A stretch of DNA of 64,000 nucleotides from Selaginella moellendorffii (taxonomy: Eukaryota > Plantae > Lycopodiophyta). The DNA lies in the NCBI RefSeq assembly GCF_000143415.4, contig NW_003314279.1, forward strand, positions 1,811,679 through 1,875,678, written 5' to 3'. This document shows positions 21,241-53,691 of the stretch, piece by piece (the first letter of the stretch is position 1; every line of letters begins with the position of its first letter). Under the pieces are notes generated by a model that worked only from the letters and a program-made list of their open reading frames with translations, searched no databases and had not been told where the DNA came from. The translations under genes and the position numbers were made by a program.

Positions 21241-24200
21241 TGTGAGGGCTAAGTGTACGGCTACGATGCTGTATACTAATATTAGCGTAGTGGGATTTTG
21301 GTAGCCGTCGCATTGGTTTTAATCCAGACAACTCACTCCTATATATAAACTAGGGTTTTTGGGTTAATTGAGATGAACATTTCTATATTCCCTTTTTATA
21401 TTCCATGCACTCACATTGGTGGAGGTGAGGGGCAGCTGGGGAGTGCTTGGATTTGGGATTTCGGTTTAGATCTAGCTTTTGCATCATTTAGATCTAGCTT
21501 TTTCCATTTCCTTTCTTTTGTTCTTTCCTTTCAGGATTTTGGTTTAGATCTAGCTTTTTGCATTGTTTAGATCTACCATTTCTTTCCAGCTTTTTGTTAT
21601 TTCTCTTCTTTTGCTCTTTCTTTTTCGTTCATCTTAATGGCCGATTAGCAATCTCCTCCTTTGACTCTAGAGCAGCAGTTGGTTCAATTGCTTGATGTTA
21701 TGCGCTTGCAATTGAACAACCAAACTCAATTGATGGCGGCATTCATGGCACGTGGACAAACTCCTCCTGCTCTTGGTGCCAATCCTCGCGTTCGGCCGGA
21801 GTTCTTTCGTGGGAATCCTGGGGATGATGTGTACCATTGGTTCGATCACTTCACGGTGATTGCCACATATCATTCTTGGGATGATGCTCAACATTTGCGT
21901 GAGTTTCCCACGTGTCTCCAAGGGACAGCGTTGCAGTGGTACAATAGATTGAGTGCGGCCACTTGTGGGGATTGGAGTGTTCTTCCGGATGTCTTCAAAT
22001 GTGCCTTTGGACATGCCAACGATTGTGATGATGCCTTCCAACAATTGCATTGTCTTTGCCAAGGGCCATTTGAGTTGGCGATGCAATTTGGCATTCGTTT
22101 CCAAAGTCTTTTGCTTCGTGCGGAGCCAAATATGTTGGAGCAGATCAAGCTAGGAATGTTGTGGCCAGCACTTCGTCAAGATCTTGTCGGCCTTGTGCAT
22201 GCACTTGCTCCTGCCACCCTTGATGATGCTCTTCGCTTGGCACAACGTTATGAGACGTCGCCTCTTCCACTTCTCGTTGCACGTCCTTCAGCTCCACTTC
22301 CTATGAGTGATGGTCCTGTTCCAATGGAGGTTGATGCTGCTGCTACTCGAGTCCACGGATAAGGGTGAGGACGTGGTCGTGGCCGTGATGTTCGTTGCTG
22401 GGCATGTGATGAAGTTGGTCATATTTATCGGCATTGTTGACGCTTTCCAGATTGGCGACCTCCATTTCCTGGATGGAGACCTTGGCGTCAACAACGTCCC
22501 GTTGGTGCTGTTGCGGTGGAAGGCTTGGACACCGAGGTGCACCCGGGAAATGAGGAGTCACGCGAGTAATGGAGGGACCTTGCGTGAATAAGTTAGTGAC
22601 CCCTCCATCTTTCTTTCGAGAGTATCATCAAGGGGTTCACTCGGCACCGGTTCATCCAGTGTTTACTTTCCAAGCTCGTTTTTATAACAAGAGGTCTCCT
22701 ATTCTTCTCTCCGTGTTGGTTGATACAGGTTCGAGTTTATCTTCTATTGCTCGACCTGTTGCCACATGTTGTTGTTTACACTTGCGTTGTGCGACAGATC
22801 CAATTTTCATTCTTTATGGCAACGGCCGTACACATGCATGTGCACGAGATGAGGCAGACCTGGTTGTGCGTGTGGGTGATCTCAAGCTTGAGTTGCAGTC
22901 ATTGTGGGTGGTGCCGAGTCAAGCTTTTGACCTCATTCTTGGTATGGATTGGTTGCAGCGCAATTATGCCAAGTGTGACTTTGAGGCTTCTCCCCCTTGT
23001 CTTATACTTCCTTATGTTTCATCCATTCTTCTCACTTTCATCCCTCTTCGTCCCTTTACTTCTACCTCTGCTTCTATTACTTTTGTTTCCCCACTATTTC
23101 CTCCTATGTTTCCATCTTGTTCTGCTCTTCCCTTTTCCGATCCCTCCGAACATCTTTGTGTTGCAGTTGTTGACCGGCTCATGAAGGAGTATTCTGATCT
23201 CTTTGAATTTGACCTATCGTCTGGGGCCAAGATTGCCACACGTCATCCGATTCCCACCGGGGATGCTCGTCCAATCAAGGTCCCAGTTCGTCGTCGGTCA
23301 CCCAAGGAGATCAGGATTTTACGTACAAACGTCAAGGAGATGTTGGAGAAGGGTGTTATTCAGAAGTTGCGGAGTCCTTGGGCATGTGAACTTCATCTTG
23401 TGTCGAAGCCTGATGGGAGTATTCGTTTCTGCATCGACTATCGTCCGTTAAATGAAGTGACGATCCCGGATGTGTACCCTCTTCCTCACACGACTGATCT
23501 CTTGGATTGTCTAGGGCGAAGTCGTTGGTTCACCAAGCTCAATCTTGCTTCTGGGTACTGGCAAGTACTGATGGCTGAAGAAGATATTCCTAAGACTGCT
23601 CTTTGTACACCATTTGGTTTGTATGAGTTCTTGGTGATGCCGTTTGGTTTGAACAATGCTCCAGCAACTTTCCAGCGGATGATGGACGAGGTTCTTTGTG
23701 ATATGCCAGAGGTGACTGCTGACTTCATTGATGATGTCTTGATTCACTCGGAGGGGACATGGGAGGAGAACATTCGTGATGTGTGTAAAGTGTTGGATCG
23801 GCTATGGGACGTTGGTTTAAAGTTGAAGCGGTCGAAGTGCGTGTTTGGGTCCAAGGACACAACTTATCTTGGGTACTATATTTCTCGTGAAGGTTTGCAA
23901 GTTGATCCTGACAAACTTGTAGCCATTCTAAGGTTCCTTACTCCGAAGTGTGTGAATGATGTGCAGCACTTCCTGTGCAAGGTGTAGTATCTCGGTCGTT
24001 TTGTGGATCATCTTTCTGATCACACTGCACCGTTGCGAGCGTTGCTGAAATCATCAACGTCATTTTTCATCTGGTCTTCAAATTGTGAGAAGGCGTTTAT
24101 GAATCTCAAAGAGCTGTTAACAACTCTTCCGGTTTTGGCATATCCTGACTACACTCGACCTTTTATTTTGCACGTAGATGCTTCTGATATTGGTCTTGGA

Positions 24201-26224
24201 GGTGTGTTGATGCAAGAAAGCCTGAGTGTGCCTGGTCAGCATCATCCCATTGCATATATAAGCCGTACGTTACAATCAGCAGAAGTGAACTACTCCATAA
24301 CAGAAAAAGAGTGTTTAGAGGCAGTTTGGGGTTTCGAGAAACTTCATGCATATCTACATGGTTCTCGGATGTTATTTGAAGGTGACCATGCTGCAGTTAC
24401 TTCGTTATTGAAGCGGAAGAACCTGGTTGGTCGTACTGCTCGGTGGGCTTTGAAGCTTCAGATATATAATTTTGATGTTGTTCATCGCCCAGGGAGTTCT
24501 ATGGCTGATGCTGATGCTCTTTCTTGAGCTCCTCTTCCTTCTCCACTCTCTTCTCATGTTTATGATGAGCCTGTTGTTCCAGCATCTGTGGATTTTTTAG
24601 ACGAGGATTCTGTACTGTCAGCGGTTGCTGTACTTGATGTTCAGTGTCCACAAGGCGCAGAGCAAGATCTACCTTCTCTTGATAAAGTTCGTGAGGCTCA
24701 AAAGATTGAGCTGTGGATTCGAAGGCTTCGAGATGCATTTGAGAATCTTGCATCATTTACTGATGACTTGCCTTTTTGGCATTTACATTCTCAAAATCGT
24801 CTTGAAGATGGCCTTCTTTATTTTGTGGGGACGGATCCTAATGATCATTTACGGCTGGTGGTGCCTTCTATCTTTATTCCATGATTTCTCCATGCCTACC
24901 ATGATTCTCTTGTTTTAGGTGGGCATATGGGACATCGTCGTGTGACCAAGAAGCTGCGTAGGTCTTTCTATTGGCCAAAGATGCAATGTGATGTTATTCG
25001 GTATATGCGTAGCTGCGTTTGGTGCCAAGCTCGTAATACTCCCCCTTGTGCTGCGGAAGGACGGTTGGAGTCAATTCCAGTTTCCCGTCCGTTTGAGTTA
25101 GTGGCGTTTGATCTTATGGGACATTTTCCACGGTTGACTGCTAGCAATGAGTATATTATTATTGCTTCTGACTACTTGACTCGTTGGGTGGAAGTTGGTG
25201 CTCTTGCTAGCGCCTCTACAACTGTTATTGGATACTTCCTCCTCAATCGAGTGGTGTTCCAACATTCTTGTCCAGAGCGGATTCTTTCGGATAATGGTCC
25301 TGCATTTATGGCTGAGGTTTTTCATGTTTTGACGTCTCGGTTGGGGATACGCCACACTTTTACGAGTGCTTATCATCCACAATCAGACGGTCTGGTGGAA
25401 CGCCTCATTCGGACATTCAAAGGGATGATTGCGAAATATGTGAACTTTTAGCATTCGGATTGGGATGGTTATTTGCTGTCTCTTCGGTATGCATATGTCA
25501 CAGGGGTGCAGAGTTCTGTTGGTGCTACAACATATAAATTTCTATATGGTTATGATCCAATATTACCAACGGAGCTGGGTTTACCTTTGCGATTGCCACG
25601 AGCTCCTAATGCTAAGTCATGGGATCAATATTTGACGAGCATTCTTCCACTTGTCTGAGCAGAGTCTGCCGAACATTTAGGCCGCATACATGTGGAACAA
25701 CAATGGCGTTATAACTCCCATCATTGTCCACCTGCAGAGTACAAAGTGGATGATTTGGTGTTAGTCCGTTTTCCCCATCTTACGGTACGTGGTTTATTTA
25801 AAGGGTTCTTTGTGCAGTGGAAAGGACCGTATCGGGTGTTGTGGCAAGTTGGACCGCAAGTTTATGAGGTTTGGCATGATGTCCAACAAGCCGATCCTTC
25901 AGAGATTGTGCATGTGCAGCAGTTTAAATGCTTCATGCAAAGGGATCAGGAGTAATTAATACCGTTTACAGATCCACCAATGCCTCCTCTTGACGTTCCT
26001 CTAGATCCTAGCCCATTTACAAAAGAACCTTGACACATTATTCTGAGAGGAGGGGATGATGTGAGGGCCAAGTATATACCTACGATGCCATATACTAATA
26101 TTAACATAATGGGATTTTGGTAGCCGTTAGATTAATTTCAATCTGGACCACTCACTTCTGTATATAAATTATGGTTTTTGGGCTAATTGAGATGTATTCC
26201 CTTTCCATATTCTATGCACTCACA
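21241..26224 (+). mobile_element. Full-length Ty3/gypsy LTR retrotransposon (no chromodomain), inactivated by stop codons
   Basis: LTRs 21241-21415 and 26060-26224 (TGTGAG...CTCACA); TSD AGAG; PBS TGGTGGAG at 21417; PPT GAGAGGAGGGG; gag with CWACDEVGHIYRHC, protease VDTG, RT FIDDVL, RNase H VDAS, integrase. Confidence 0.95.
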
Positions 26225-33501: not shown

Positions 33502-34133
33502 CGCTCCCCCCTTGTCCCTCTTTCGCGACGATCCAATGCAATATTTTCGGCAATATCTGGAATTCCGGGGCGAGGCGACCTACAAAATTCCACCCCCGAT
33601 TCGACGAGCTACCACTAGAAGTCGATTCGATCGAGATCCAGATCCTAGATCCTGGCGCTACATCCCTGGATCGATCGAGCCGGAAGAAATGAGCAGAATG
33701 GAAAATAGTTTGGGAGCTAGGGCTTTATATAACTTGGACACTTGGCCTCTTTGGACCATGGCCGAAAACTTCTACCAACAAGCCCATGCTACTCCATGGA
33801 AGCTTCTCATTTATACGCTGATATGATCCGACGGTCCAGACGCTTAACTAGAAAGCGCACGTGATGGACCCTCTTCTATGGAACATATGGAGATTCCTCG
33901 CCAATAAAAACCTGTTCTAGACAAAGTAGGAGTGCTCTTCTCGACGCTGCCGCACACGTGGATGCAAAGTTTTCTTCCCGGGTTTTTGCGCGAAATTTCG
34001 AAATAGAAGCGTTTTCAAGGGTGAATATGCCGCGTACACTTGTTGTTTCAGCAATGGTGTTTGAACACCACCAATAAGATTGGAAAAAAGAATGGTGGTT
34101 GTTTCCTTGAATTCGACCGGAATCGTTCGGCTA

Positions 34134-36105
<1,972 letters not shown>

Positions 36106-36112
36106 CCACTGC

Positions 36113-36136
36113 TAAAACCCTAACCCAAGAACCCTA
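36113..36136. promoter_or_regulatory. Telo-box-like AAACCCTA motifs at the ELP3 5' end
   Basis: aaaaccctaa...aaccctaa immediately upstream of ELP3 exon 1. Confidence 0.4.
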
Positions 36137-36316
36137 AAAGAAAAAGTTCAAATATATTTTTGAAATTAACTCCAGCCATCACTCCATTCTAGCCCTAAAT
36201 TCAAAACTGTTAATTATTTCTTTTTTTTGGCTTTAAAAATTAAATTATTTTGAATTTTTGTTTGGTCAGTTTTAACAAGTCCATTGCTATTTAAATTTTT
36301 GGTTTGCTTAAGTAAA

Positions 36317-39300
36317 TGTTATAGCGGTCAAACCAGGACCCGGACTTATGTGCTCACAGCAACAAAGCCTCAAAGAAAACACACCTTTCTAGTCGTAGTG
36401 TCTGCCAAACACCCTGCGCGCTCAGACTCTGCTCCCCACCTCTGAGGTATCAATCTCCTTTCTCCCCAACCTTGCAAGAACCCTCCCTCAAGATGTCCCA
36501 CCACGTCAGCCTGTTTGCCACATGAACTGTTCGCCAAGAAGATGTGATACAACCAAAAAATAGAAAAAGTTAGGCTTAGGGTTTGACAGAGGATTCAGTT
36601 AAGGCTTCGCTAACTAGTCACTGATTCGAACGGCGTTTACTTGTGTGTCCTCAACTCCTAGACTAATGTCACATGCATAACATTGTGTAGTGATTTCCTC
36701 TTTTTCGAAGGAGAGACTTGAAAAAACATGGGTCTGATTGAGCGCTCTCCAGGACTTCTAACATTGCTGTTGAATATCAAATTAGAGAATCGTAATTCTG
36801 TGGCTAACACTGTCCATGGATTGCACTCTCTGTTTGCTGAGCCAAAATTGTCATCTTAGCTTGAGTTGGCTGATCTATTACCAAATAGGGCCCATCGTAC
36901 CATGAAGAACACTTCCTTCCTAGGATGCCTTGCACCACAACTTAGAATCTCCAACACCAAAGGGATGATCATTGATTCTTTTTCTTGTAGTTCCTTGAAT
37001 AACGAGCTTGTGCCTGTTCAATGTTTGCTCTTGCTCTTTCTTCCAAGATTGCCCTGTGATTCGAGCTTTCTCCAACGTAGTTCTGGGATTCAATACCATC
37101 ATTGGTTGCGGTGAGATCTCGCTCTTCTCCTGTAAATCATCTCAAAAGGTGAAAAACCTGTGGACTCGTGTCTTGTTGTTCTGTAAGCAAAGAGTACTTC
37201 TGGCAAAACATTGTCCCACTCCCCTTTCTTACTGAGACCATCTTTTCTAGTGTCTTGTTAAAGCGCTCTACCATGCCATTAGTTGAAGGTTTGAATCGTC
37301 CTGTCAGGGTGTGCTTCACACCCATTCTGCAGCACAGTAGGGAGAATGCCTCACTGCAAAACTCTTTTCCCCTGTCAGTAAGGATCTCCTCTGGGACTCC
37401 ATGTCTTAAGATAACATCCTCGTAGATAAACTCCACGGCAGTCTGAGTAGATTTGTCTTTTACTGCTCGTGCCTCAGCCTACTTAGAGAAGTAGTCCATG
37501 CAAACAACAGTATATTTGTTGCCATGTCTGGAGGGGAAGTTGAAAGGTCCCACCCTTGCAAAAGGCCCTCCAATTGGCAACGGCTGTAATTCTGAGGTTA
37601 TAGATGACCGCATAGGAGCATTAGAGATCTTGCAAGCCGTACATGAGGCTATCACCCGATCAACATCATTCGTCATACCAATCCACCAGTAATGCTGCTG
37701 TAAATCATCTAGGATCCTGTTCCGTGATAAATGTCCCGATAAAGAGGAAGCATGGTATCTTAGCACGAGCTCATCGACCTCATTGATTCAGCTCTCTTGA
37801 AGCGATGTACATTAGCTTGCCATCTAGCACACCAACTTATCTCTTCCTCAATTGAGTTTTCTCCTCACTGACTTGTCAATGCCAGGAACAATCTCTCCTG
37901 ATTCAGCAAAGGCCAAGCGCAGTTTGTATTCTTCGCGATCCATCTGAAGTCCAAAGCAGGGATAACTACCTCAACCAACCCACACACTTAAATAATCAAG
38001 TCCAAATGGGGATGCTCACGCGGATGGAACTACAACCCAGAACAGGAATGATAAATATTGCCAATACGATTAAACATGAGAACTATAGCAAGGAAATTCA
38101 ACAAGTTTGTGAGACAGTCTAGCTGTGAAAGGCTCTGGATAACCCATCTGCGTTCGAGTTTTGTGAGCCTCTTTTGTAAACAATTTCATAGTCATATCCC
38201 ATTAAGTAAATCCACCATCGCTGGAGACGACCTGAGAGTGATCCTGAGCCTTGAAGAGCCTTGAGCGCTTGGTGATCAGTTTCGATTTTGACTCAGGTGC
38301 CATGGACATAAGCACGGAAGTGTTTGAGTCCCTGTACTACAGCAAGACATTCCTTTTCCGAAATGGAGTAATTTTGCTCGGCACCATTCAGCTTTCTGAA
38401 TGGGATGTTCCACATTGCCAATCTGTGCCAATATTGCTGATATGGCAAGTCTTGACGCATCGCACTGCAAAAGGAAAGCCTTGTTGCACAAGATGGATCA
38501 ATACATTACCAGGCAACCACAATACTTGCAATCAGGATAAGATAATATAGGCTACTTGCACAGCTCCCGCTTTAGTTCTTCAAAGGCGTTCTGCTGCTCG
38601 GCACCCCAAGCCATCCACTCCAACTGCTTTAGAAGCTTCGTCAGTGGCAAGGCCCTTTCTGCGATTTGTTGATAAATCTTCGATAATAGCCAGCCAAACC
38701 AAGAAAGACTTTAATCTGCATCGAGGCATTAGAGTTCCAAACACACGAAGGAGAACTCGTGTACCTACTTCTTTCCCTCAGGAATAGGAAACTCCTTCAC
38801 TGCTGATATTTTCTCAGGATCCGGAGCAATTCCTTTGCCAGATACCACATGTCAAAGAAACTTAATTTCGCGCATGAAGAAGTGACATTTTTTTGGCTTA
38901 ATCTTCAGACCTGCTGCTTTCAATCTATAAAATACCTTTCTGAGGGGCTACATACTCCCCGAGAATAGACATTAACGTTGTCTATATAGACAAGTGACGA
39001 TTCCCATCTGAGCATACCGAGGACACAGTCAATAAGTCTTTGAAAAGTAGCACTCGTGTTACATAGCTCAAAAGGCATGCTTTTGAACTGGTACAAACCA
39101 TCCCGGCATGTAAAAGCTGTCTTTTCCTTATCCTCTTCTCTCATAGGCACTTGACAGAATCCAGAGGCTAGATCAATTGAGGAAAACACCTGAGTTACAA
39201 CACATAAGTACCAGCATACCTCTCTCTCAGACATCTACCTGTGCACCAGCAAGCTGGTCGAGTGTATCATCTATTCGTGGTAGTGGATAAACATCACACT

Positions 39301-42130
39301 TAGAAATGGAGTTCAACTTGCAATAATCAACGCAGAATCTGGTTGTGCCATCCTTCTTCTCGACGAGAACCACTGGCGCTGCCCAGGGTGATGATGAAGG
39401 CTCAATTATGTCAGCATCTAACATTTTCTTAATCTCCTTGGAAACAATCTTCCGCTGTTTGGGAGTTTCACGGTATGCATGCTGCTTGATTGGTCTGCTT
39501 GAGGAAGTATGGATCTCATGACAAAGCATATCAGTTTTGCCCAGGTCAAGAGTTCCAGTACTAAAAATCTCCCGGTACTGCCACAGCAACTCATCAAATT
39601 CAGAAACGAGATCCGTACCTGAGAGCATATCTCCAACTTTTAGTTCTCCTTTTATCCTCCCAAGGAATTTTAGAGCCTCCTTATCTAGTGGCAGCTTTTC
39701 CGACGGCATACAGCTCACTCCCCTAACATAATTTTTGAATGGTTCTGGCAATCCAAGAGCATCCAGACCATAAGCAGCTGTATAGCGCACAATGTCTGAG
39801 ATATCTTTGCATGCTGCCTCGGCTATAGGATCACCCGACTTGACATTCACTGTGGAGGTTGTCAAGTTTGCCATAAGGATGTCAGGCTTGTCCTTATATG
39901 CAGAACTAATTATTCCATTAGCTACTGACATGCCTCTCTAGAGTGCCTGATACGAGGACCACAAGTGATGAACATTCCCTTGCAGCAACAAATAAAGAAT
40001 TGTGTTGGGACAAATACCTACATGTACTGGGCATGAATACATGCAGCATGGAACAAAACAAATTAAATCACAACCTGTGACATAGGAGGAATCGTAATGT
40101 CTGCGTCCACTTTTAGTAGCATCACCTTTCGATCAACCAAAAATACTTCGTTTGCAATTGCCTCTGCAAAGAGCAACCACAGCTTGTGAGGCAACATCAA
40201 TCTGGATGCCATGTTACCTTTGCATGGCTCCTTCCACAGATACATCCCTTGCTTGATTGGAGCAAATGTTTTAAACTCAGAAGTGCAACAAAAGGCTTTG
40301 TGTGAAGATTCAGGTTAAGCAGACCCCCCAACTTCACAGGTCTGTGACCATTGGAGAAAGTGAGTTGCCTCTCCCTTATTTCAATCTTTGCATCTATAGC
40401 ATCCATCCAATCAAGTCCCAACAATGCTGTATTTGCACATGTGACTATACATGTCATCCTCACTGCTGTGTCCCCAACCTTTCCTTCTATATTTGAACCC
40501 TATAGATTGTCTCTCAAGTTGTTCTTTTTGATTGCTTACACTATAGTTACAAGATTTTGTTGTGGTTATGATATAGTGGACCAAAAGAAGATCAATTCGT
40601 TATCTCTATGGTTGAGCTCAGATTTCTCTAAGAGAGTGGTGGCCATGGTGGACACAGGCTATGAAGTGACAACAGTGCCAGAAAAGTGGGTAACCGAGGC
40701 CTCCAAGGTGGTATGCCCTTGTCATCACATACGTATACACATGGTCAATGATGAGTTATATACACCTCGAGGTCTAGTCGATCTTGATTTGAAGGGGATG
40801 CTGACTTTTTAGGGCTAAGGCAATTGAGTTGGATAGAGTCTAGAGTTGGTGTAGAAAAGTGGCCGTATATCTTGTAGTATAATATGATCTTTTGCCACAC
40901 ATCCCACCTAGGGCCCATGAACAAAAGTGCATCCCCTTTTCCAATTGGTTAAGGGTCTTGGGATATTTGGGTTAAGCGTTCTAGGGTTTGAATAGTACTG
41001 GGCTAGGTGACCTCTCGGGAAGTCCAAATTCAAGAGTTTACATTTGGTATCAGAGAAGTCTCAGGTCTGTTTCCATTGGTTAGTTTAGGGAAATCACACC
41101 TGAGATTAACATCTGGCAAGTTCAGTTTGTTTCCGGCTGGGCTAGACCCGAGGGGTAGGGTGTCAAGAGAGTAAAGCTCTCGGGAGAGATGCGGCTCTCA
41201 ACTTCCATTCACAAGGGTTTGAATTTGCAGAAAAGCATGATGAATTGTAAATAACCAAAGAGAACGGCTTGAGAGACGGACTATAGAGTTCAAATATAGA
41301 GGGAAAGAGCCCATGAATAAGAGTGCAACCCCTTTTCCAATTGGTTAAGGGTTTTGGAATATTTGGGGTTAAATGTCCTTAGGTTTAAATAATACTGGGT
41401 CCCGAGAAGTCCAAATTCAAAAGCTTACATGTAGAAAGAAGGGTAGGGTATCCATTATTTGCGTCTGACCCTTGCACAAGCGCAAGCTCTAGTTTAAATT
41501 CTCTTCCGAAGACTTTGCTTTAAGGGCCTCAACTTGCCAGTTCAAGTCATTGTATCACTTCTCTAGGTCAGCAATGTAGGTACAATTATGCTGAATGTGG
41601 CCTTCTTTCCCACAAGTGTAACAACCAGTCCTTTTGCTAGGTCCCTTGTCCCTTTCCCCATCAGCAAGTGCCAACTGCTTGACACCACTGCCTACCCTAT
41701 ATCTGTTTTGAGACCAGCTACCTCTCGAGAAAGTCTCACCTCTTTTGGCATCATAGTGGTAGTCTTCTGGCTCTCCTGAGTCATCACTCTCTTGTACCTA
41801 TGGCCGAGTAACACATGTTGTAATTGCTTTGGGTTTCCACTTTTTCAATGCTTCTGCTGTTGTAGAAAGCAATTCATCCATAGATCTCGTTTTTGCAGTG
41901 ATCAGATAAGGCTGTAGATCCTCACGAAAGCCTCAATAAAAAGCTTGCTTCACCATCCTTTCTACCTTTTCAATGTCATTAAAGATATATGTGGCAGCCC
42001 GTCATAGAATAGCCCAATATTGCTGCACAATTGATAATTTCTTGTATTGATAAGTTCAAAGGCTCTATCCTCTAGATCCCCAATGATGAAGAGCCTCCTG
42101 GCCAAAGCTATGGCCTCATTCTAGGATGCC
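36317..42130 (-). mobile_element. Degenerate Ty3/gypsy retroelement with short GT-AG introns in pol; disrupted by a TRIM and an inversion
   Basis: Integrase (ILTDRGKEF, TNGMVERFN), RNase H (QCDAS), RT ([20 protein letters not shown]), protease (MVDTG / LLGLDWM), gag remnants 41430-42130; candidate single LTR 36317-36682 (TGTTAT...ATAACA). Confidence 0.85.
40478..41429 (+). mobile_element. Cassandra-like TRIM copy 1 (5S rRNA-like LTRs); 5' LTR split by an inversion
   Basis: 3' LTR 41246-41429 (TGTAA...TTACA); 5' LTR pieces 40478-40540 (inverted) and about 40911-41042; PBS TGGTATCAGAG; TSD TATAG/TGTAG. Confidence 0.85.
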
Positions 42131-42365
42131 ATTTGATCTCGAGCATAGTGTGTGATAAACATTCTTTGTGCCTCTCTTGAGAAAGCTATAGAGTGAATGC
42201 ATTGCATAGTGAGGGTATGTGCGGAAAAAGATAAAAATTGTGGCCCAAGAAGTGATGGAATGGATGGAATGGAGGCCATATTATGGTGGATGATACAGAA
42301 GAGGACTATGTGTGGTCTGATGTCACAATTGGAAGTAGTAGCTAATATTGGGATTTGATGTAGAG

Positions 42366-45228
42366 CAGTGTGTAACAAAGTATTTTTAGTGTACTGGAAA
42401 AAATCCTTGAATACTTAAAATGAATAGGATATATTTTTTTTGTACCGGCATAATCCTTAAAAGAGGAAATCTCATTCGGATAAATTCCTTAATATATGAA
42501 AACTATAAGGAAGTTAAACATCTACAAACCGTCACTTTAGCTTATATAAATATGCCTATAAGTTGCACCTTCCTTCCATGCTTGCACCACTGTTTCGAAA
42601 TCAAACTCAGCTATTGGCGGACCCTCAATGGAGATCCTCACAAGCTCGTCAACCATCTCCGTCCCCATCTGGTTTCGAAACTTATTCTTCACCAAGTTGA
42701 TTCTACTAAACCCACGCTCACATGATGCAGTATTGCAGCATTGAACCATGCCGACCATTGCCAACTTCAGCAAGTTGGGATACTTCTTCGTCCAGATACT
42801 GTGAGCATAAATCATCCATGAAAGTTTTCCCCTTCCACTCCTCGGAAGCTATTATCTTCCATAAACTGTACTCTTCAGCCAGATCTGCTTCATTGATCAT
42901 CCCTGTGTAGAACTTTCCAAGTTCCTGAACCTCAAACTTACCAAAAGCTTTCAACTCACGCACTGATGAAGGTAAGTTGATAGGAGCTAAAAAGTGGAAC
43001 TTGGAGAGAATACCAGTCGCCTCAGAGTCCTGTAACCTGGTCCTTATACCCTCCAAAAGACTAGTGCCAAAGTTCTTTTGAAACTCTAGTACCTCCTCCA
43101 AATCTTCTCCATGAATCGACCTGATCATTTCCACGTCTCTGTATTCGTTTCCCTTAACTGATGACCTGAGCTCATCCAAAGGACCATTGCGACGTCCACC
43201 ATCTGGGATTATAGGATATCCTCTGCTATCCAACTGAAAACCATTCAAATCCACCTGCTTATCCAAATAGTATACCTGTATCTTGGCCATAGTTGCCTTG
43301 CATAAAGGTGCAACACTAGTCACGTCCATAGTCTGTGCTTGAAACTCCAGGTTCAGCTGATTTACCACTGCCAAGATATCTCCTAGAAAGTGGAGTGCAT
43401 AAAGGAACTTGAAACTCCTGAGACAGTCATACAGCTTCCTTGTTTGAGTTGTTCTCCCATCCTTAAAAAACTTGAGTAGTGGTTCCAGACACTCACACAT
43501 CCTGGTAATGGCTCCACCCCTGCTCAACCAACGTGTCTGCTGGATCCGCAACACCTTCAACACCTTGAATTCTAGCTCGTCCTGTAGTGCCTGTAGCTGC
43601 TGCAACCTGCTAGAACTCCTTGAGAAAAAACTGGCTACCTTGTTCACCACCTGATCCACTTCATCGCAAAGATTATGAACTGCTGGATTCTTGTAGACGT
43701 CCTCCACACATAAGTTAGCTCTGTGTGAAAGACAATGTGTGGAGGTCATGAATGGATTGACCTCCTTCAACCTTGCTGCAACCCCTGTCCTGTTTCCTGT
43801 CATAACATTGCAGCCGTCTGAACCAAACCCCACAAACCTGCTCATATCCAACCCCCAATCCTGCAGTGAAGCTATGGTGGTGTTAAAAATCACCTCTGCA
43901 GAACTATTGTTCACCATTGACAAGCCTAAATAGCTTGTCAACACCCTTGCGTCGTGGATGTAGGTCACGTAAAAGATGAGGTGTTTATTGGTACTGCATT
44001 AACAAATTTAGAACCAAGAATATCACTAATCAGCTTTACCTTATATTCGTGCTCTCATCTAGCATTATTCCAAAGAATGGGCTAGCTTTAACTTTCTCCA
44101 AAATTTGATCTAAGAGCACCTACACAACAAAATTCAGTCAAGGTTTATCATCAGACTTTAGCTCACCTTGTTGATGAAAGTGATGAAGCGTGAGTAGGCC
44201 ATCACGTTCTTGTACATGCTAGGAACATAAACTCCGTTCAACTGTTGTAGCTTCAGAAGCAATGGGTATTTGCGAAGAGGAACAAAACCTTGTGCAATAG
44301 CATAAGCAATCCTAAACAAGCAAATAACTCCCTTCTCTGCTGCCTCTTGTTGCCGATCATTTGCAGCTGCCATGGAGGATTGACCGCCAGCTTTCACCTC
44401 AGCTATGTAAATGGAATGCTTGTGATCTTTTGTTTGCCCATGAGCATGGAAACTTGAAGTCTTCATGTTGGTGGAACCTGATGTACCAAATGGATTCTTG
44501 CAATTCTTGTTGGTACGGCATATTGAGCAGAAGATCAGTGCTGTAATGCAAGTAGGATTAGATGAAAAATCAAGAAAATTATTACCATTTTTCTGATCAA
44601 AATGCAACCACCGCCATTTTATGACCCATGCAGGTTGCCACTTCCCCCTACGAATTTTCTTCTCCTTCTCCTCTACTGATGCAGCATCACCTTCTCCCAC
44701 TTCACATCCCTCCTCAGGCTCAGTCCCCTCCAGGTTGTCCTCATCTACAAAACCTCCTCTCTCCACAATGGGGGCAAAACTTAACAAAGATTGCTTTGAT
44801 TGAGCAATGGCTTTTGCAGCAGCCTTGCTCCTACCTGTAGGCACCCTCCCCATTTCCCAGATGATCTCCCCACCAAAATCTATGTTCACGCACGCCCACG
44901 TGAACATTGTGAAAGAATATTCTAACCTTAGATTAATGACATGGTTTACTTAGTGTAACTATGTTTAGTTAGTGTTAACTAAGATTGATGATTATTTATT
45001 TAATCTTGTTAATTAGAATTAATTAAACATAATTAACCATGAAACCCTAATCCTCAAAAGGTAGGTGAATGTACCGGCAGGATTCCTTATAACATCCAAA
45101 TGTACTGGATCTAGCCTTATATGAGATTTTTTGCACCGGTCGTATATCCTTGTAACTTTGTTTTGTACCGGCAATTCTGAAATGGTACCGGCGGGGTACA
45201 AAGGAGCCTCGGACTTTGTTACACACTG
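42366..45228 (-). mobile_element. Complete hAT DNA transposon
   Basis: 16-bp TIR CAGTGTGTAACAAAGT; perfect 8-bp TSD ATGTAGAG; subterminal GTACCGG motifs. Confidence 0.97.
42537..44853 (-). pseudogene. hAT transposase (ZNF862-like clade) with short introns and one frameshift near 42815
   Basis: IFCSIC..H...H zinc finger, GFGSDG, HCLSHR, TRWLSR, TASCERGFS dimerisation domain. Confidence 0.88.
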
Positions 45229-47256: not shown

Positions 47257-50200
47257 TGTCAAGACCCCTGACAAGATCAAGACTGGAAAATGCAAAAAGA
47301 CAAAGAGAAAAAGCTAGTGGAAACAAAGAAGAGGCCTTAGACTGGCGTTGATTCAGATTGTGGAGAAATGGAACAAGGCTAACCTATATATACTATAGGT
47401 TGATGAAGCTCCACCACTCTTGGATCGAGGACGGCCTAAATATAGCTGTGGTCGAGGAGGCGCCACATCATCATTAGGAATATGGCTCGAGACTCAGGAA
47501 TCGGAAAGTGTCTCGAGAGTCAGGAATAGGGAAGTATCTCGAGAGTCAGGAATAGGGAAGTGTCTCGAGAGTCAGGAATGTGGTCTGCAGGTCAGGAATG
47601 TGGCAAGAATTAGGGGATTCCTGACAGCACCCCCTCCTCAAGAACGAGTGGAACGAGGATGTGAACGAGAACGAAGAGGAGGATGAGATGAGCGGCGATG
47701 GATGGGAGATGGAGAAAAAGAATGAGGACTGGGACGAGAAGGATAGTGTCGGTGGAAGTCCTGAACAAGGTCAGGAGAATGAATCAGGTTGTCCGCAGGT
47801 TCCCAAGTGTGTTCCTCAGGTCCGTAACCCTTCCAGTCCACCAGATAGTAGAGTTTAGACCATGAAATCTTGGAATCAAGGATGTCCTGAACCTCGTACT
47901 CAGACCCATCCTCGAGCTGCACTGGTGGAGGCGGAGGAATGACCCGATTTGGAATTGAATTTGATATGAGGAGGGAAGTGCAAGGCGATAAGTGACAGGA
48001 TTAATGATGGCAGTGATAGGGAAAGGACCAAGGCGTTTGAAATCGAGTTTTGGACAGGGCCTGGTGGTGGAGATATTTCGCCTGAAGAGCCAGACTTTAT
48101 CCCCGATATTGTAAGGGGGACAATCCTGACGATGGACATTGGCAAATGTTTTATGAGATTCCTGAGCACGATGGAGGTGGAAGGAGATGGAGTTGTGGAT
48201 TTCCTGGAGGTTGGAGATAAATGCTTTAGAGCGGGGATTTGAACGAGAGGATTCAGATGGAGAAGGAAGTGAGAGATTGAATTGGGGATTTCGGCCAGAG
48301 TTTGCAAAGAAGGGGGAAACTCGAAGAGAGGAGTGAACAGAGTTGTTATAGGAGAACTCAGCAAGGGGAAGGATATCGAACCAGTTATCCTGATGATAGT
48401 TGATGAAGCACCTCAAGAATTGTTCCAACGTCTGAATCATTCGCTCGGACTGCCCATCAGTTTGAGGATGATATGCCGAAGAGAGGTTGGCCTTCACTCC
48501 AAGCAGCTGCAAAAACCGTTGCCAGAAATGAGAGATGAACTGAGGCCCTCGATCCGAAACCACATCTGTAGGAATCCCATGAAGTCGGAAAATTTCCCTG
48601 AATACCAGTTTTGCCATGTCCTCGCCCGAAAACTCCTTGGTACATGGCAAGAAGTGCGCCATCTTTGTGAAGTGATCCACCACGACTAAAATGCTGTTGA
48701 AGCCTCCAGAACTCAGAAGATCACTCAAGAAATCCATGGAGATGGATTCCCAAGGACCTGAAGGGACCGGAAGGGAACGAAGCAAACCTAAAGGAAGGTG
48801 GCGAGGTACCTTATTCCGGGCACAAGTGTCACAGGAGGTAACAAAAGCTTGATGTAGTCGTCCATGTGAGGCCACCAAAAGTCCCGTGCAACTAGCTCAT
48901 AGGTTTTCGCAATGCCGAAGTGACCAGCAATCGGGCTATCGTGGCACGCCATCAGGACCAACCTTCGAGCATCACCTTCAGGAACATAAAGCTGCTCCCC
49001 ACGGTACAATAAGCCATCTAAGAACTCGAACTCGTCAAATCGCCGGCAATTGGGAGTCACTGGGTGTCCAGCTTGAAGATGGGGGAAAATGTCGCTAGCA
49101 AGATCATCGGATTGAAGATCGTTTCTGATTGCATCCATCAAGGAGGAGTCCTGAGGGGCCAGGGAAATTGCCATAACTTGAAGCCGATCAGGACCGAGGA
49201 TAACTTGATCCTGTTGATTGAAGGCAGGATTACCAGGCCTGAGACTGAGATAGGAGCGCCTTGAAAGAGCATCAGGAAGGCCTTGAAACTTTCCAGGTCT
49301 GTACTTGATAACAAAGTCAAACCGGCTCAGGAATTGTGCCCACCTTGCTTGACGACGGCTTAAAACTCGGGAAGTGGCAAAGTACTTGAGATTTTTGTGA
49401 TCCGTCCAGACTGTTGTTTGATGGCTCGCCCCCTCCAAGAAACGGCGCCACTCTCCAAAGGAATCCACGATGGTAAGGAGCTCCTTGTCGTGGATTTCGT
49501 AATTGATCTCCGCAGGCTGGAATTTCCGAGAATGGAAAGCGACCGGATGAAGTTCGTGATCCGCTCCGAGTTGAGACAGCACAGCACCAATGGCAAAGTC
49601 AGAGGCGTCAGCCTCGATGAAGAAAGGTTGTGAGGAATCAGCATGGATCAAGACAGGAGCAGAACTGAAGGCCGCCTTGAGTGTGTCGAAAGTCTGCTGG
49701 GCAGCAGCAGACCAAGAGAAGGGAACATCCTTGCGAGTGAGATATGTGAGAGGAAGGACAATGTCAGAGTAGTAATCAATGAATTTGCGGTAGAAGTTGG
49801 CGAAGCCAAGGAAAACCTGAACGTCCGACATTGATTGTGGAGGCTCCCATTCGAGAATAGTCTTGACTTTGGCAGGATCTATCGTGATATCTTCAGGAGT
49901 GACAATGTACCCAAGGAACTCCACAGACTGCTGATCAAAGGAACATTTCTCAAGCTTCGCGTATAGGCCATGTTCTCGCAGCTTCGCTAGCACCTTGCGT
50001 ACATGTTCGCCATGCTCCTCCTGAATTTTTGAGTAGATGAGGATGTCATCGAGGTAGACAATCACCATCTGATCAAGAAACTCCCGAAAGACGTCGTTCG
50101 CCATGTGTTGGAAAACTGCTGGAGCATTTGTCAAGCCAAATGGCATGACAGTGTACTCGAAGTGGCTATAGCGGGTTCGGAATGCAGTCTTCCACTCATC

Positions 50201-52763
50201 ACCAGGCCGGATCCGGATCAGGTTGTATGCTCCACAGAGGTCAATCTTGGTGAAGAAGCGGGCACTGTCGAGGCGTTCCAACAGGTCTGAGATCAGGGGC
50301 AGCGGATAACGGTTCCAAACAGTCACCTTGTTCAAACCTCAGTAGTCGATGACTAGCCGCAAGCTCCCATCCTTCTTCTTGACAAAAAAGATAGGCGCTC
50401 CAGCCGGGGACTGCGAATGCTGAATGTACCCCGAGGCAAGGTTCTCATCCACATACTCTTTGAGGGCCTTAAGCTCGGACGGGGATAACCCGTAGATAGG
50501 CCCCCACGGAGGTGACGCTCCTTTCTGTAAATCAATGGGACAATCATAAGGCCGATGAACAGGCAGTACACTAGCTTTTTTCTTGTCAAACACATCCCCA
50601 AAATCATGATACTTCTCAGGAAGACTAACAGGAGAAACATGCAAAGCAAAAAGAAAAAGAGGTTCTTCATGAAGGAGTTCTTTCATAGTGATTGTGGAGA
50701 TAGGAGGAGGCGTACGACTAAGTGGACTGATGAGACAAGGATACGGTCCAGTGTAAGATGAAAGAGAGGAAAAAGAAGAGGGTGAAAACTTTATAGAGTC
50801 AGGAACAGAACCCTGATTCGAGTTTAGGGAACTTTTCCTGATTCGGACTCGATGAACAGCAGGGGAAGCCGTGGGAGAGATGAGCTGTAATTCCTTCCAA
50901 CAGATCTGAGGCTGATGTAGTTGGAACCAAGGAAGACCAAGCACCACAGAGGAGGACTTGCTGTTGATGATGTTGAAGGCGATATTGGTGACGGTGGACC
51001 CTATGTGTACTCGAACGGGCAACGTTTCCCTAAGTCCAGAAGATGGAGATACAAAATGCCCGCCGATGCCTTCAACCCTCAAATCCCGTATGGTAGGAGA
51101 AAGAGGAACGTGATGTCGGGTAGCAAAGTCCGTGTCCATGAAGCAGGAAGTTGCACCCGAGTCTAGTAACGCCAGAGCCTTGAGTCTTGATTGTCCGGTG
51201 AAAGAAAGGAGACATGGGATGCAGAAGTTGCGGGAATTGGTGGTGGCTTTGATGAAAGGTGGTGAGGAGCTTGATAAAGAAGAAAAGTGATTTTTATTCG
51301 GGGAGTCCAAACAGACAGCTCCTACTCTGTTTGGACAGGTTCGTTTCGCGACTGTAATAGAGGTGGACTTTGAGGCAGAGTGAACTCGAGCAGTCGAGGA
51401 GGCTTCTTGGGACATACAGCTGCTTTGTGATTAGGATCAGCACAATAGAGGCAAAGATTATGAGATATTCGACGTTGCTTCTCAGCAGGACTCAACTTCC
51501 CTCTAATGAGTCGGGGAGTACCAGAAATATCCATCGGAACCGGAGCAATAGGTTCAGGAGTATGCCCTGAAGACTCAAGCTGGGATTCCTGAGTTTGGGA
51601 CGGAAAAACAGCGGCGTGGCAACTTTCCTGACGACGTTCAAAGAGACGATTGTCACATCGAACAGCTTTGTTGATGGCATCCGACAGGTCCTTGGGATCC
51701 TCCATGGTGACCAACAAATCCTTGACACCGTTGTTGAGGCCGAAACGAAATTGGTCAATCAGGGCCCGCTCATCCCACTGAGTGTCCAAAGCAAGGAGTT
51801 GGAACTCGGCAGCGTAGATCGAGGCAGGACGAGACCCCTGAGAGAGACGTCTCATCTTTGTGGTAGCAGCCCGAACCCAATCCGTCTCGCCAAAACATGC
51901 TTCGAGCTTCTCTTTGAACAATTGAAGATCCATCAGCTCTGGAACCACGACCCCTTTCATGCTCTTCTCCAGAAGAGGAGAAAACCATGACAAAGCTGCA
52001 CCTTCGAGCAACATCCCAATCGCGCCGATTTGAGACTCGGGAGTAGGGTACCGCCGATGTTGAAGTGCGAAGATCAACTCCATCTGGTTCAGGAATCCGC
52101 GAAGCTCCGAACGCTTGCCTGAAAATTTCGCCGGGAAGCTCACCTTTGGTTCAGGAACTTTACTGGATCCTTGAGCCGAAAGTGAAGCAAGCTCCTGCTG
52201 CATGCGAAGAAGGGTCGCCTTCAGCTCGGTATTCTCAGACTGGATTTTTGCAAGGACTTCAGCAAAGAAATTAGGATGGCTTGGAGACTCCATTGGCAAG
52301 AAGAAAGAAAGAAAGGGGGAAAAAAAGGCAAAGGTAATCAAACAATCAAAATGAGCTAAATCAAAAAATGAAAAAACACAATCTGAATCAAACTGTCAAG
52401 ACCCCTGACAAGATCAAGACTGGAAAATGCAAAAAGACAAAGAGAAAAAGCTAGTGGAAACAACGAAGAAGCCTTAGACTGGCGTTGATTCAGATTGTGG
52501 AAAAATGGAACAAGGCTAACCTATATATACTATAGGTTGATGAAGCTCCACCACTCTTGGATCGAGGACGGCCTAAATATAGCTGTGGTCGAGGAGGCGC
52601 CACATCATCATCAGGAATATGGCTCGAGACTTAGGAATCGGAAAGTGTCTCGAGAGTCAGGAATAGGGAAGTATCTCGAGAGTCAGGAATAGGGAAGTGT
52701 CTCGAGAGTCAGGAATGTGGTCTGCAGGTCAGGAATGTGGCAAGAATTGGGGGATTCTTGACA
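47257..52763 (-). mobile_element. Full-length chromovirus (Tf/Tcn1-like Ty3/gypsy with chromodomain)
   Basis: 370-bp LTRs 47257-47626 and 52394-52763 (7 differences counted); TSD GTTTT; PPT; gag from 52293; protease LLDSGA; RT YLDDIL; RNase H; integrase; chromodomain EYEVQDILD..YYLVDWKGYGPEEHTWEP; stop at 50339 and frameshifts. Confidence 0.97.
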
Positions 52764-53104
52764 GTTTTGTGTGGAGCCAAATATGTTAGGAGGGAGCAAG
52801 TTAGGAATGTTGTGGCTGGAGCAAGTGTATGCACAAATCACACAAGATTTTGACAAAATGTTGTGTTGATGATACTCTTTATTTAGTACAATATTGTGAA
52901 ATATCATCTCTTCCACTTCTCACTACATGTTCTTTAGCTCCACTTTTTATTGATTGTAGCCATGATGTCCACTATTGGGCATATGATGAAGTTGGTCACA
53001 CATATCAGCATTGTTAGCATTTTCTAGATTAACATCCTCCATTTCCTAGCTGGAGGCTTTAGCATCAACAACATCTTATTACTGTTGTTGTAATGAAAAG
53101 TTTA

Positions 53105-53691
53105 TATAAGTAACTAAAGAGAACGACTTGAGATACAATCCATAGGGTTCAAATATACAAGGAAAAGGCTTATGAAAAAGAGTGCACCTGTTTTTCCCAT
53201 TGGTTAAGGGTTTTGGGATACTTAAGGTTAAACATCCTTGCGTTTGAGTAGTACTAGGTTGGGTGACCTCCCAAAAAGTCTAAATTCAAAAGTTTATATT
53301 TAGTATCAGAGAGGTCTTGAATCCAACTTTATTGGTTGGGTAAGGGAATTATACCACATGTTGAGATTGATATCTGGCAGGTTCAATTTGCCTTTGGCTG
53401 GGGTCGACTCGAGGGGTAGGGTGTTAAAAGAGCAGGATTCTCAAGAGAGCTACAGCTTTTATCTTCTGTTCACGAGGGCATGAACTTGTAAGGAAGCATA
53501 ATAGATTATAAGCAACCAAAAAGAATGATTAAAAAGACAATCTATAATGATTTAAATATAGAGGGAAAAGGCCTATAAAAAAGAGTGCACCTCTTTTTCA
53601 AGGTTTTGAGATATTTAGGATTAAACATTTTTGAGTTTGAGTAGTACTAGGCTGGATGACCTCTTGAAAAGTCCAAATTTAAGAGCTTACA
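53105..53691 (+). mobile_element. Cassandra-like TRIM copy 2 (complete, decayed)
   Basis: LTRs 53105-53298 and 53507-53691; PBS TAGTATCAGAG; GAGTAGTACTAGGTTGGGTGACCTCC 5S-like core; internal region matches copy 1. Confidence 0.85.

What the first reader, a model, noticed from the sequence alone, without database searches (positions are those of the whole stretch)
38484..40074. Ty3/gypsy pol interrupted by several short spliceosomal-type introns
Seen on the - strand. Insert 39190-39238 (49 nt, GTAGAT...AACTCAG) splits [11 protein letters not shown]|VFSSIDLASG inside RT. Insert 38716-38764 (49 nt, GTACAC...CTCTAAT...ATGCAG, branch-point-like) splits FPIPEGKK*|IKVFLGLAGYYRRF. Insert 40018-40074 (57 nt, GTTGTG...TGTAG) splits ITIPPMSQ|VFVPT. 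Insert 38484-38525 (42 nt, GT...AA, AG probably decayed) splits YPDC(N)|KAFLLQCDAS. Removing the three RT/RNase H inserts exactly restores canonical gypsy spacing, and removing the two 49-nt ones also restores the frame. Sizes match host introns in this window. Established knowledge: reverse transcription of spliced RNA purges introns, so introns inside RT are very unusual in land-plant LTR elements. Inference: either this family packages unspliced RNA and needs splicing to make Pol (a splicing-gated retrotransposon), or it is a domesticated gag-pol gene that gained introns and later decayed.
Basis: partly seen in the sequence, partly recalled or inferred. Interest (0 to 1): 0.92.

Follow-up and report, generated by a model that had tools for sequence, protein, structure and literature searches.

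The report
Intron-split pol in dead Selaginella retroelement
A dead gypsy-type jumping gene in the spikemoss Selaginella moellendorffii has at least four tiny host-style introns cut precisely into its dUTPase, reverse transcriptase and RNase H. This is very unusual for an element that copies itself through RNA, but this copy alone cannot show that the introns were ever spliced or passed on.

Summary
On the minus strand, four short inserts (57, 49, 49 and 42 nt) interrupt a degenerate gag-PR-dUTPase-RT-RNase H-integrase. Each sits exactly where intronless homologues are colinear, and each retained insert brings an in-frame stop.

- **Splice signals:** three inserts are GT..AG in the window.
- **Host match:** sizes fit four host introns in the same window (55-74 nt).
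- **Controls:** two other gypsy families in the window have no such inserts.
- **Independent confirmation:** the other assembly and contigs of four public runs also carry the inserts, and none shows a form without them.

What remains unproven:
- No RNA run holds the locus.
- I found no sister copy.
- The locus has no LTRs.
- It was already dead when the two haplotypes split.

My best reading (about 0.5) is a relic of an intron-bearing gypsy lineage that needed splicing to make Pol. The main rival (about 0.27) is a resident, domesticated gag-pol gene that gained introns and then decayed.

This scan has noted intron-split gypsy elements on other DNA of the same genome, including one abundant family whose follow-up reported exact splicing in RNA data. 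I could not check those notes.

The parts
41492..42150 (-). Remnant of the gag C-terminal part with a CCHC zinc knuckle. It is 5'-truncated or unrecognisable further upstream.
   Evidence: Frame translations give CYTCGKEGHIQHNC at about 41600. The L001 allele has a weak zf-CCHC hit, E 0.018.
40200..40795 (-). Protease. The C-terminal half (LLGLDWM..) lies on the minus strand at 40200-40499. The active-site part (VDTGYEV) lies in a 318-bp segment, 40478-40795, that is inverted in the window but collinear with pol in L001.
   Evidence: ORF lists, blastn orientation, P0005 alignment.
40164..40217 (-). I0: candidate fifth intron, 54 nt, AAG|GTAACA..CTTTGCAG|AG. It is in frame with no stop, so it is not verified.
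   Evidence: The JGI model P0001 skips it. The alignment to P0325 is too weak to decide. A YTNAY motif lies 23 nt from the 3' end.
40018..40074 (-). I3: 57-nt GT..AG insert inside the dUTPase-like domain. If retained, it reads VVI then a stop.
   Evidence: There is an exact 19-aa gap against P0325, and IPPFSQ|KLV is continuous in P0315. It is identical in L001.
39239..40017 (-). Exon or exons encoding the rest of the dUTPase-like domain and the N-terminal part of RT, up to ..DQLAGAQ. Frameshifts shared by both haplotypes lie near 39930-39960.
   Evidence: Weak Pfam dUTPase hit, E 0.03, while relatives P0315 and P0325 reach 2.8e-5 and 4e-12. Alignments.
39190..39238 (-). I1: 49-nt GT..AG insert in the RT fingers. 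If retained, it reads VDV then a stop and shifts the frame.
   Evidence: The junction falls at position 69 of the RVT_1 profile, where the downstream exon begins. Contigs from X1, X2, X3 and X7 run through it.
38765..39189 (-). RT exon with the YIDD box. It is 144 intact codons in L001. The window has a private 10-nt deletion at about 38945 and a private TGA. Both haplotypes share a TAG as the last codon.
   Evidence: RVT_1 E 1.5e-29 for the L001 version.
38716..38764 (-). I2: 49-nt GT..AG insert between RT and the connection region, with CTAAT 13 nt from its 3' end. If retained, it gives a stop and a frameshift.
   Evidence: Spacing is identical to L002. There is a 16-aa gap against P0301.
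38526..38715 (-). Exon covering the connection region and the start of RNase H (IKVFLGLAGYYRRF .. PILSYPDC). It has a frameshift and a TAG shared by both haplotypes.
38484..38525 (-). I4: 42-nt insert at the start of RNase H. It is GT..AA in the window and GT..AG in L001. If retained, it reaches a stop after 10 codons.
   Evidence: L002 is colinear here, with YPSFERLFLLQMNAS against YPDC|NKAFLLQCDAS.
38122..38483 (-). RNase H exon, with private indels in each haplotype.
   Evidence: Pfam RT_RNaseH and RT_RNaseH_2 hits.
36800..38121 (-). Linker and integrase: H2C2 zinc finger, DDE core and GPY-type C-terminus. No intron-like insert was found here, only frameshifts and a shared stop.
   Evidence: Pfam Integrase_H2C2 at 1e-15 and rve at 3.5e-8; P0301 alignment; indel list.

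Best explanation
The inserts are genuine U2-type spliceosomal introns, and they were already present while this gag-PR-dUTPase-RT-RNase H-integrase was still a working coding sequence. The locus is a dead, LTR-less relic, present in both haplotypes, of an intron-bearing Ty3/gypsy lineage of Selaginella moellendorffii.

In such a lineage the unspliced transcript can only be translated as far as Gag-PR, because every verified intron brings a stop within 3 to 11 codons. Pol can be made only from RNA in which all the introns have been removed. The unspliced RNA would serve as the genome that is packaged and reverse-transcribed, which keeps the introns in new copies. That is the Ogre principle of partial splicing setting the Gag:Pol ratio, extended to several introns inside catalytic domains.

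Shown here: the anatomy and precision of the inserts, their host-like signals, their presence in two haplotypes and in independent runs, and their absence from relatives. Inferred: that they were spliced, that they predate the death of the element, and that the lineage transposed with them.
For: - **Precision and splice ends.** There are four precisely placed inserts with GT..AG ends, counting the L001 allele for I4. Only 0.5% of same-length stretches have GT..AG ends by chance.
- **Motif spacing.** Removing each insert restores the motif spacing seen in intronless homologues: L002, P0325, P0301 and the RVT_1 profile.
- **Host-like features.** Insert sizes of 42-57 nt compare with host introns of 55-74 nt in the same window. 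All inserts carry YTNAY 13-23 nt from the 3' end, as the host introns do, against 42% of exon control stretches. Inserts are T-richer than the exons, 36% against 27%.
- **Stops on retention.** Every retained insert gives an in-frame stop.
- **Controls in the window.** Two other gypsy families here are colinear, without inserts.
- **Not an artefact.** The inserts are in GL377583.1 and in contigs of four runs, and no run shows a joint that removes them.
- **Timing.** The haplotypes differ by 1.9% and by 14 frameshifting indels. I counted only about 5-7 disabling lesions shared by both. The sequence was therefore intact shortly before the haplotypes split, and it already carried all the introns.
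- **A working retroelement.** A full set of catalytic motifs survives: VDTG, YIDD, DAS, HHCC and the DDE core. That fits a working retroelement better than a co-opted gene.
- **Leads only, unchecked.** Scan notes report another abundant gypsy family in this genome with spliced integrase introns. They also report multi-intron pol copies 155 and 213 kb upstream on the same scaffold.
Against: - There are no LTRs, primer-binding site or target-site duplications around the locus, so this copy cannot be shown to have arrived by retrotransposition.
- I found no sister copy. Three word-index protein searches and one exhaustive HMMER search returned only P0001, which is the same locus on the other haplotype. 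The next best hit is at most 61% identical.
- In runs X1 and X2 the RT region is covered by a single contig at 80% likeness or more.
- No RNA run holds the locus, so there is no junction evidence.
- Keeping four or five efficient host-type introns unspliced in genomic RNA is mechanistically demanding.
Confidence: 0.5

Rival explanations
1. The locus was a resident, single-copy host gene derived from a gypsy gag-pol (a domesticated or endogenised element without LTRs). It acquired host-type introns while expressed as an ordinary gene and was later pseudogenised in S. moellendorffii.
For: - No LTRs, primer-binding site or target-site duplications.
- The RT region looks single-copy in DNA contigs.
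- There are no close paralogues among annotated proteins.
- The intron signals and sizes are indistinguishable from those of host genes.
- The locus is shared by both haplotypes at one syntenic position next to ELP3-like and PDR-ABC genes.
Against: - From my own knowledge, known domesticated gag-pol genes keep only part of the polyprotein. Here PR, dUTPase, RT, RNase H and integrase all retained catalytic motifs until shortly before decay.
- Gaining four or five introns needs a long life as a gene, yet no intact orthologue above 61% identity appears in 15 billion proteins.
- Unverified scan notes describe several other intron-split gypsy pol loci in this genome.
Confidence: 0.27
2. The inserts arose in situ after the element had died. 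They would be filler DNA, small duplications or mini-transposon insertions that only look like introns.
For: - The copy is riddled with other indels: 16 differences between the two haplotypes in 3.7 kb.
- I1 and I3 are flanked by AG|GT on both sides, a pattern also expected for some insertion mechanisms.
Against: - Four of four inserts have GT..AG ends, against a 0.5% background.
- None deletes or duplicates a flanking codon.
- The inserts are unique in the window, unlike one another and unlike their flanks.
- All are shared by both haplotypes, whereas ordinary indels are mostly private.
- There is no reason for neutral insertions to sit at proto-splice sites and to carry branch-like motifs.
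Confidence: 0.06
3. The inserts are an assembly or sequencing artefact.
For: None found.
Against: The same inserts are in GenBank scaffold GL377583.1 (L001) and in Logan contigs of runs X1, X2, X3 and X7, which come from three samples.
Confidence: 0.01

Closest known systems
Ogre elements (Tat lineage of Ty3/gypsy; pea, Medicago)
   Same: An LTR retroelement whose Pol can be translated only after a spliceosomal intron is removed. Only part of the transcripts are spliced, so unspliced RNA keeps the intron in new copies (PMC6317226 and PMC4408406, citing Neumann 2003 and Steinbauerova 2008).
   Different: Ogre has one intron in a non-coding spacer between the gag-PR and RT-RNH-INT reading frames. 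Here at least four introns of 42-57 nt lie inside conserved dUTPase, RT and RNase H motifs. The lineage is also different: there is no archaeal-type RNase H, and the nearest RTs are not plant Tat elements. Splicing is not shown here.
EVADE and other Ty1/copia elements with alternative splicing
   Same: A plant LTR element that uses the host spliceosome to balance its products (PMC12786077, citing Oberlin 2017).
   Different: In those elements splicing produces a subgenomic gag RNA, and the full Pol is made from unspliced RNA. Here Pol would need splicing.
Intron-split gypsy chromovirus family noted earlier in this scan in the same genome (s1-380460, s1-420458 and others)
   Same: Same genome, with tiny host-type introns inside pol. 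The follow-up reports say they are retained across many copies and cut out exactly in RNA data. These are unchecked AI notes.
   Different: That family has its introns in the integrase and is abundant. This locus has none in the integrase, has its introns in dUTPase, RT and RNase H, lacks a chromodomain, and looks single-copy.
Penelope-like elements
   Same: Retroelements known to retain spliceosomal introns (PMC4209133 abstract).
   Different: They belong to a different class, with a telomerase-like RT, a GIY-YIG endonuclease and no gag-PR-INT.
Domesticated gag or gag-pol genes (for example PEG10 and the RTL genes; from my own knowledge)
   Same: LTR-less, single-locus and of retroelement origin.
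   Different: Those genes keep only gag with or without PR and are under purifying selection. This locus kept the whole polyprotein and is now a pseudogene.

Membership tests
Ty3/gypsy (Metaviridae) LTR retrotransposon | Domain order PR-RT-RNase H-integrase, with gag upstream | tested here: met
   Pfam RVT_1, RT_RNaseH, Integrase_H2C2 and rve appear in that order on the minus strand. A CCHC knuckle lies upstream.
Ty3/gypsy (Metaviridae) LTR retrotransposon | Paired long terminal repeats with target-site duplications, a primer-binding site and a polypurine tract | tested here: not met
   No flanking direct repeat in the window or in L001, even with 7-nt words. The only PBS-like site, at 41045, belongs to the inserted TRIM element.
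U2-type spliceosomal intron | GT..AG termini | tested here: met
   I1, I2 and I3 have them in both haplotypes. I4 has them in L001 only, because the window carries AA.
U2-type spliceosomal intron | Exact removal restores the reading frame and the conserved spacing of the protein | tested here: met
U2-type spliceosomal intron | Length and internal signals typical of the host | tested here: met
   The inserts are 42-57 nt against 55-74 nt for four host introns. YTNAY lies 13-23 nt from the 3' end in all of them, and they are T-enriched. The branch-motif test is weak, with a 42% background.
U2-type spliceosomal intron | Removal from RNA (junction reads) | not testable with these tools
   No run on record as RNA holds the stretch, and all the runs that were laid are contigs.
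Intron-retaining retrotransposon (Ogre-like strategy) | The same introns in independent insertions of the family | tested here: inconclusive
   The only other copy found is the allele, L001. No close paralogue appears in the protein searches. The candidate copies named in scan notes could not be fetched.
Introner or miniature transposon origin of the inserts | Multi-copy inserts that resemble one another, with terminal repeats or target duplications | tested here: not met
   Each insert matches only itself in the window, and there is no similarity between inserts. Only 64 kb was searched.
dUTPase-bearing gypsy elements | dUTPase domain between PR and RT | tested here: inconclusive
   The element's own hit to PF00692 is weak, at E 0.03. 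The relatives that align over the whole stretch score 2.8e-5 and 4e-12, and the alignments are colinear.

The most novel reading that the evidence does not exclude
Selaginella moellendorffii harbours a second gypsy lineage, non-chromoviral and dUTPase-bearing, that propagates with four or five obligatory spliceosomal introns inside its catalytic domains. Pol synthesis would be gated by complete multi-intron splicing, while fully unspliced RNA would be the packaged genome. With the chromovirus family noted elsewhere in this scan, that would make intron-gated Pol expression a recurrent strategy in a genome with very short, intron-defined introns.
Probability: 0.42. Interest if true: 0.8.

Novelty: new variant of a known kind. 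Interest (0 to 1): 0.55.

Why it matters
Reverse transcription of spliced RNA removes introns. A 2025 review states that plant LTR retrotransposons generally lack introns, with Ogre and EVADE as the exceptions (PMC12786077). Several introns inside RT and RNase H would mean one of two things. Either the element separates a translated, spliced RNA pool from a packaged, unspliced pool much more strictly than any described case, or a complete gag-pol lived as a host gene long enough to gain introns. Either outcome bears on how Gag:Pol ratios are set, how intron-containing RNA escapes nuclear retention, and how introns are gained in plants. This locus is dead, so its value is as a marker of a lineage to look for, not as a working example.

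Tried and rejected
- **Sister copies.** I searched with the 233-aa dUTPase/RT exon, the 144-aa RT exon of L001 and a 153-aa integrase piece, and ran an exhaustive HMMER search of 1.84 billion representatives. Only P0001 was close, and it proved to be the same locus on the other haplotype. These blanks are weak evidence, because unannotated TE copies are not in protein collections.
- **Earlier scan notes.** The copies noted 155 and 213 kb upstream could not be fetched.
- **LTRs.** I searched by self-blast, the repeat finder and 7-nt-word blast between the flanks and found nothing.
- **Mini-transposon or tandem-duplication origin of the inserts.** Rejected within the window.
- **Integrase introns like those of the other Selaginella family.** None here.
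- **Fifth intron I0 and a possible intron in the RNase H-integrase linker.** Both left unresolved.
- **Literature.** Searches found no description of multi-intron pol in Selaginella or other plant LTR elements. That is no proof that none exists.


Full report
**What is there**

The window comes from Selaginella moellendorffii. The best protein hit is SELMODRAFT_412707, and its locus, L001, is GenBank scaffold GL377583.1. L001 is syntenic with the window at 92-98% identity, with the same ELP3-like and PDR-ABC neighbours. I take L001 to be the other haplotype of the same locus.

On the minus strand, between about 36.8 and 42.1 kb, lies a degenerate Ty3/gypsy polyprotein. It consists of:
- a gag remnant with a CCHC knuckle;
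- a protease;
- a dUTPase-like domain;
- RT, RNase H and integrase (Pfam hits; frame maps).

The stretch between PR and RT matches Pfam dUTPase only weakly (E 0.03). The two database relatives that align over its whole length score 2.8e-5 and 4e-12. The copy is dead, with many stops and frameshifts. A TRIM/Cassandra-like element is inserted between gag and PR. In the window, the 318-bp piece that carries the protease active site is inverted.

**The inserts**

- **I3** (40018-40074, 57 nt) splits ITIPPMSQ|VFVPT in the dUTPase-like domain. P0325 aligns with a gap of exactly 19 residues at that point.
- **I1** (39190-39238, 49 nt) splits the RT. The downstream exon begins at position 69 of the RVT_1 profile.
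- **I2** (38716-38764, 49 nt) splits FPIPEGKK*|IKVFLGLAGYYRRF. The spacing is the same, residue for residue, as in the 61%-identical homologue on L002, which is colinear through sites 1, 2 and 4. P0301 shows a 16-residue gap there.

Only 0.5% of same-length stretches of this region have GT..AG ends. Every donor follows an exonic AG. Every insert has a YTNAY motif 13-23 nt from its 3' end, like the four host introns I delimited in the PDR-ABC gene of the same window. Those measure 55, 74, 55 and 57 nt. The branch-motif test is weak, since 42% of exon control stretches also pass it. The inserts are T-richer than the exons. If retained, each gives an in-frame stop within 3 to 11 codons.

A fifth candidate, I0 (40164-40217, 54 nt, GTAACA..TTTGCAG), is spliced out in the JGI model. 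It is in frame and has no stop, so I could not verify it.

**Controls**

Two other gypsy families in the window read straight through RT-RNase H and integrase without such inserts. One lies at about 21.6-26 kb on the plus strand. The other is a young chromovirus at 47257-52764, with 371-bp LTRs that are 98.1% identical, and it is absent from L001.

The inserts match nothing else in the window, and they resemble neither each other nor their flanks. They are not an assembly artefact. L001 carries all of them. Contigs of runs X1, X2, X3 and X7 run through them, and no run shows a joint that removes one.

**When did they arise?**

The two haplotypes differ by 1.9% in substitutions, and the rate inside the inserts is about the same (1.6%), so everything now evolves neutrally. 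They also differ by 14 frameshifting indels. By reading the frames against homologues, I counted about five to seven disabling lesions shared by both haplotypes:
- the TRIM insertion;
- frameshifts in the dUTPase part;
- the TAG in front of I2;
- a frameshift after RRFINK;
- a TAG at the start of RNase H;
- a stop in the integrase core.

On this rough lesion clock, the sequence was intact not long before the haplotypes split, and it already carried all the inserts. This is inference. It argues that the introns belonged to a working coding sequence and are not debris added after death.

**What could not be shown**

- No run on record as RNA holds the locus, and the runs that were laid are contigs, so splicing is untested.
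- I found no LTRs, primer-binding site or target duplications in either haplotype.
- No sister copy turned up. Three word-index searches and one exhaustive HMMER search returned only P0001. After it, hits are at most 61% identical.
- The named relatives I looked up are a pseudoscorpion and an amphioxus; the rest are unnamed ENA or JGI contigs. Other named hits are spiders and ticks. None is from a plant.
- In X1 and X2 the RT region is covered by a single contig at 80% likeness or more. More diverged contigs (about 87%) appear only over the integrase and linker.
- These blanks are weak evidence, because unannotated TE copies do not reach protein collections.

**Reading**

I hold with high confidence (about 0.85) that these are real spliceosomal-type introns in what was a functional gag-pol. 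Two histories remain.

1. **Relic of an intron-bearing gypsy lineage (about 0.5).** It would work like Ogre taken further. Unspliced RNA gives Gag-PR and serves as the genome, and fully spliced RNA gives Pol. In favour: the full catalytic repertoire survived until shortly before decay, and the introns sit so that Pol is impossible without splicing. Leads from this scan also point this way. One abundant chromovirus family of the same genome is reported to have spliced integrase introns. Multi-intron pol copies are noted 155 and 213 kb upstream on this scaffold. I could not check those notes.
2. **A resident LTR-less gag-pol gene that gained introns and then decayed (about 0.27).** This fits the absence of LTRs and the single-copy look. 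It requires an unprecedented domestication of the whole polyprotein, and no orthologue has been seen.
3. **Insertions after death (about 0.06) and artefact (about 0.01)** are unlikely.

**Comparison with known systems**

Ogre has one intron, in a spacer between reading frames (PMC6317226, PMC4408406). EVADE-type copia elements splice to make a gag subgenomic RNA (PMC12786077). That review states that plant LTR retrotransposons generally lack introns. I found no paper describing several introns inside RT or RNase H of an LTR element.

The scan has already noted the phenomenon on other DNA of the same genome.

**Verdict**

As a single dead locus the finding is interesting but not decisive.

Noticed in passing
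window 40478-40795 (with 40479-40540 and 41246-41307): A 318-bp segment holding the protease active site (VDTGYEV) is inverted in the window relative to L001, where it is collinear with pol. It is bounded by 62-nt inverted repeats, 82% identical, that belong to the inserted TRIM-like element. This suggests a haplotype-specific inversion by recombination between those repeats.
   Followed up: partly
window 40910-41434 and 53107-53691: TRIM/Cassandra-like repeat family, with internal direct repeats 396 nt apart and a PBS-like TGGTATCAGAGA at 41045-41056 on the plus strand. One copy is inserted between gag and PR of the element, and another lies 12 kb away. The same feature is noted as s1-422307.
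   Followed up: partly
window 47257-52764: Young chromovirus on the minus strand, with 371-bp LTRs that are 98.1% identical and a chromodomain. It is present in the window but absent from the L001 haplotype. It has no introns and a single frameshift between RNase H and integrase.
   Followed up: partly
window 42363-45227: A 2.9-kb stretch absent from L001, carrying long open reading frames of 416 and 249 aa on the minus strand that look transposase-like. The family was not checked.
   Followed up: no
window 34100-36150 (L001 13321-15744): The neighbouring ELP3-like gene lacks the stretch around the radical-SAM cysteine motif and has a frameshift in both haplotypes. The JGI model (385 aa, ELP3_N only) starts inside the retroelement's integrase. 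The window also has about 815 bp more than L001, at 34516-35332. It is probably a decayed ELP3 paralogue.
   Followed up: no
window 21650-25950 (+): Another gypsy element with gag and pol almost intact in single frames. It served as an intronless control.
   Followed up: partly
window 38033-38112: In the RNase H-integrase linker the haplotypes differ by a 19-nt indel upstream of a T-rich ..GTTGTAG. This is a possible further short intron, but no convincing donor was found.
   Followed up: no
whole element (RT 38765-39937): The nearest RT relatives in 15 billion proteins are from arachnids, amphioxus and unnamed ENA or JGI contigs, at 61% identity or less. None is from the usual plant gypsy clades. 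The lineage may correspond to the Selaginella-specific Selgy clade or be something else. No phylogeny was built.
   Followed up: partly
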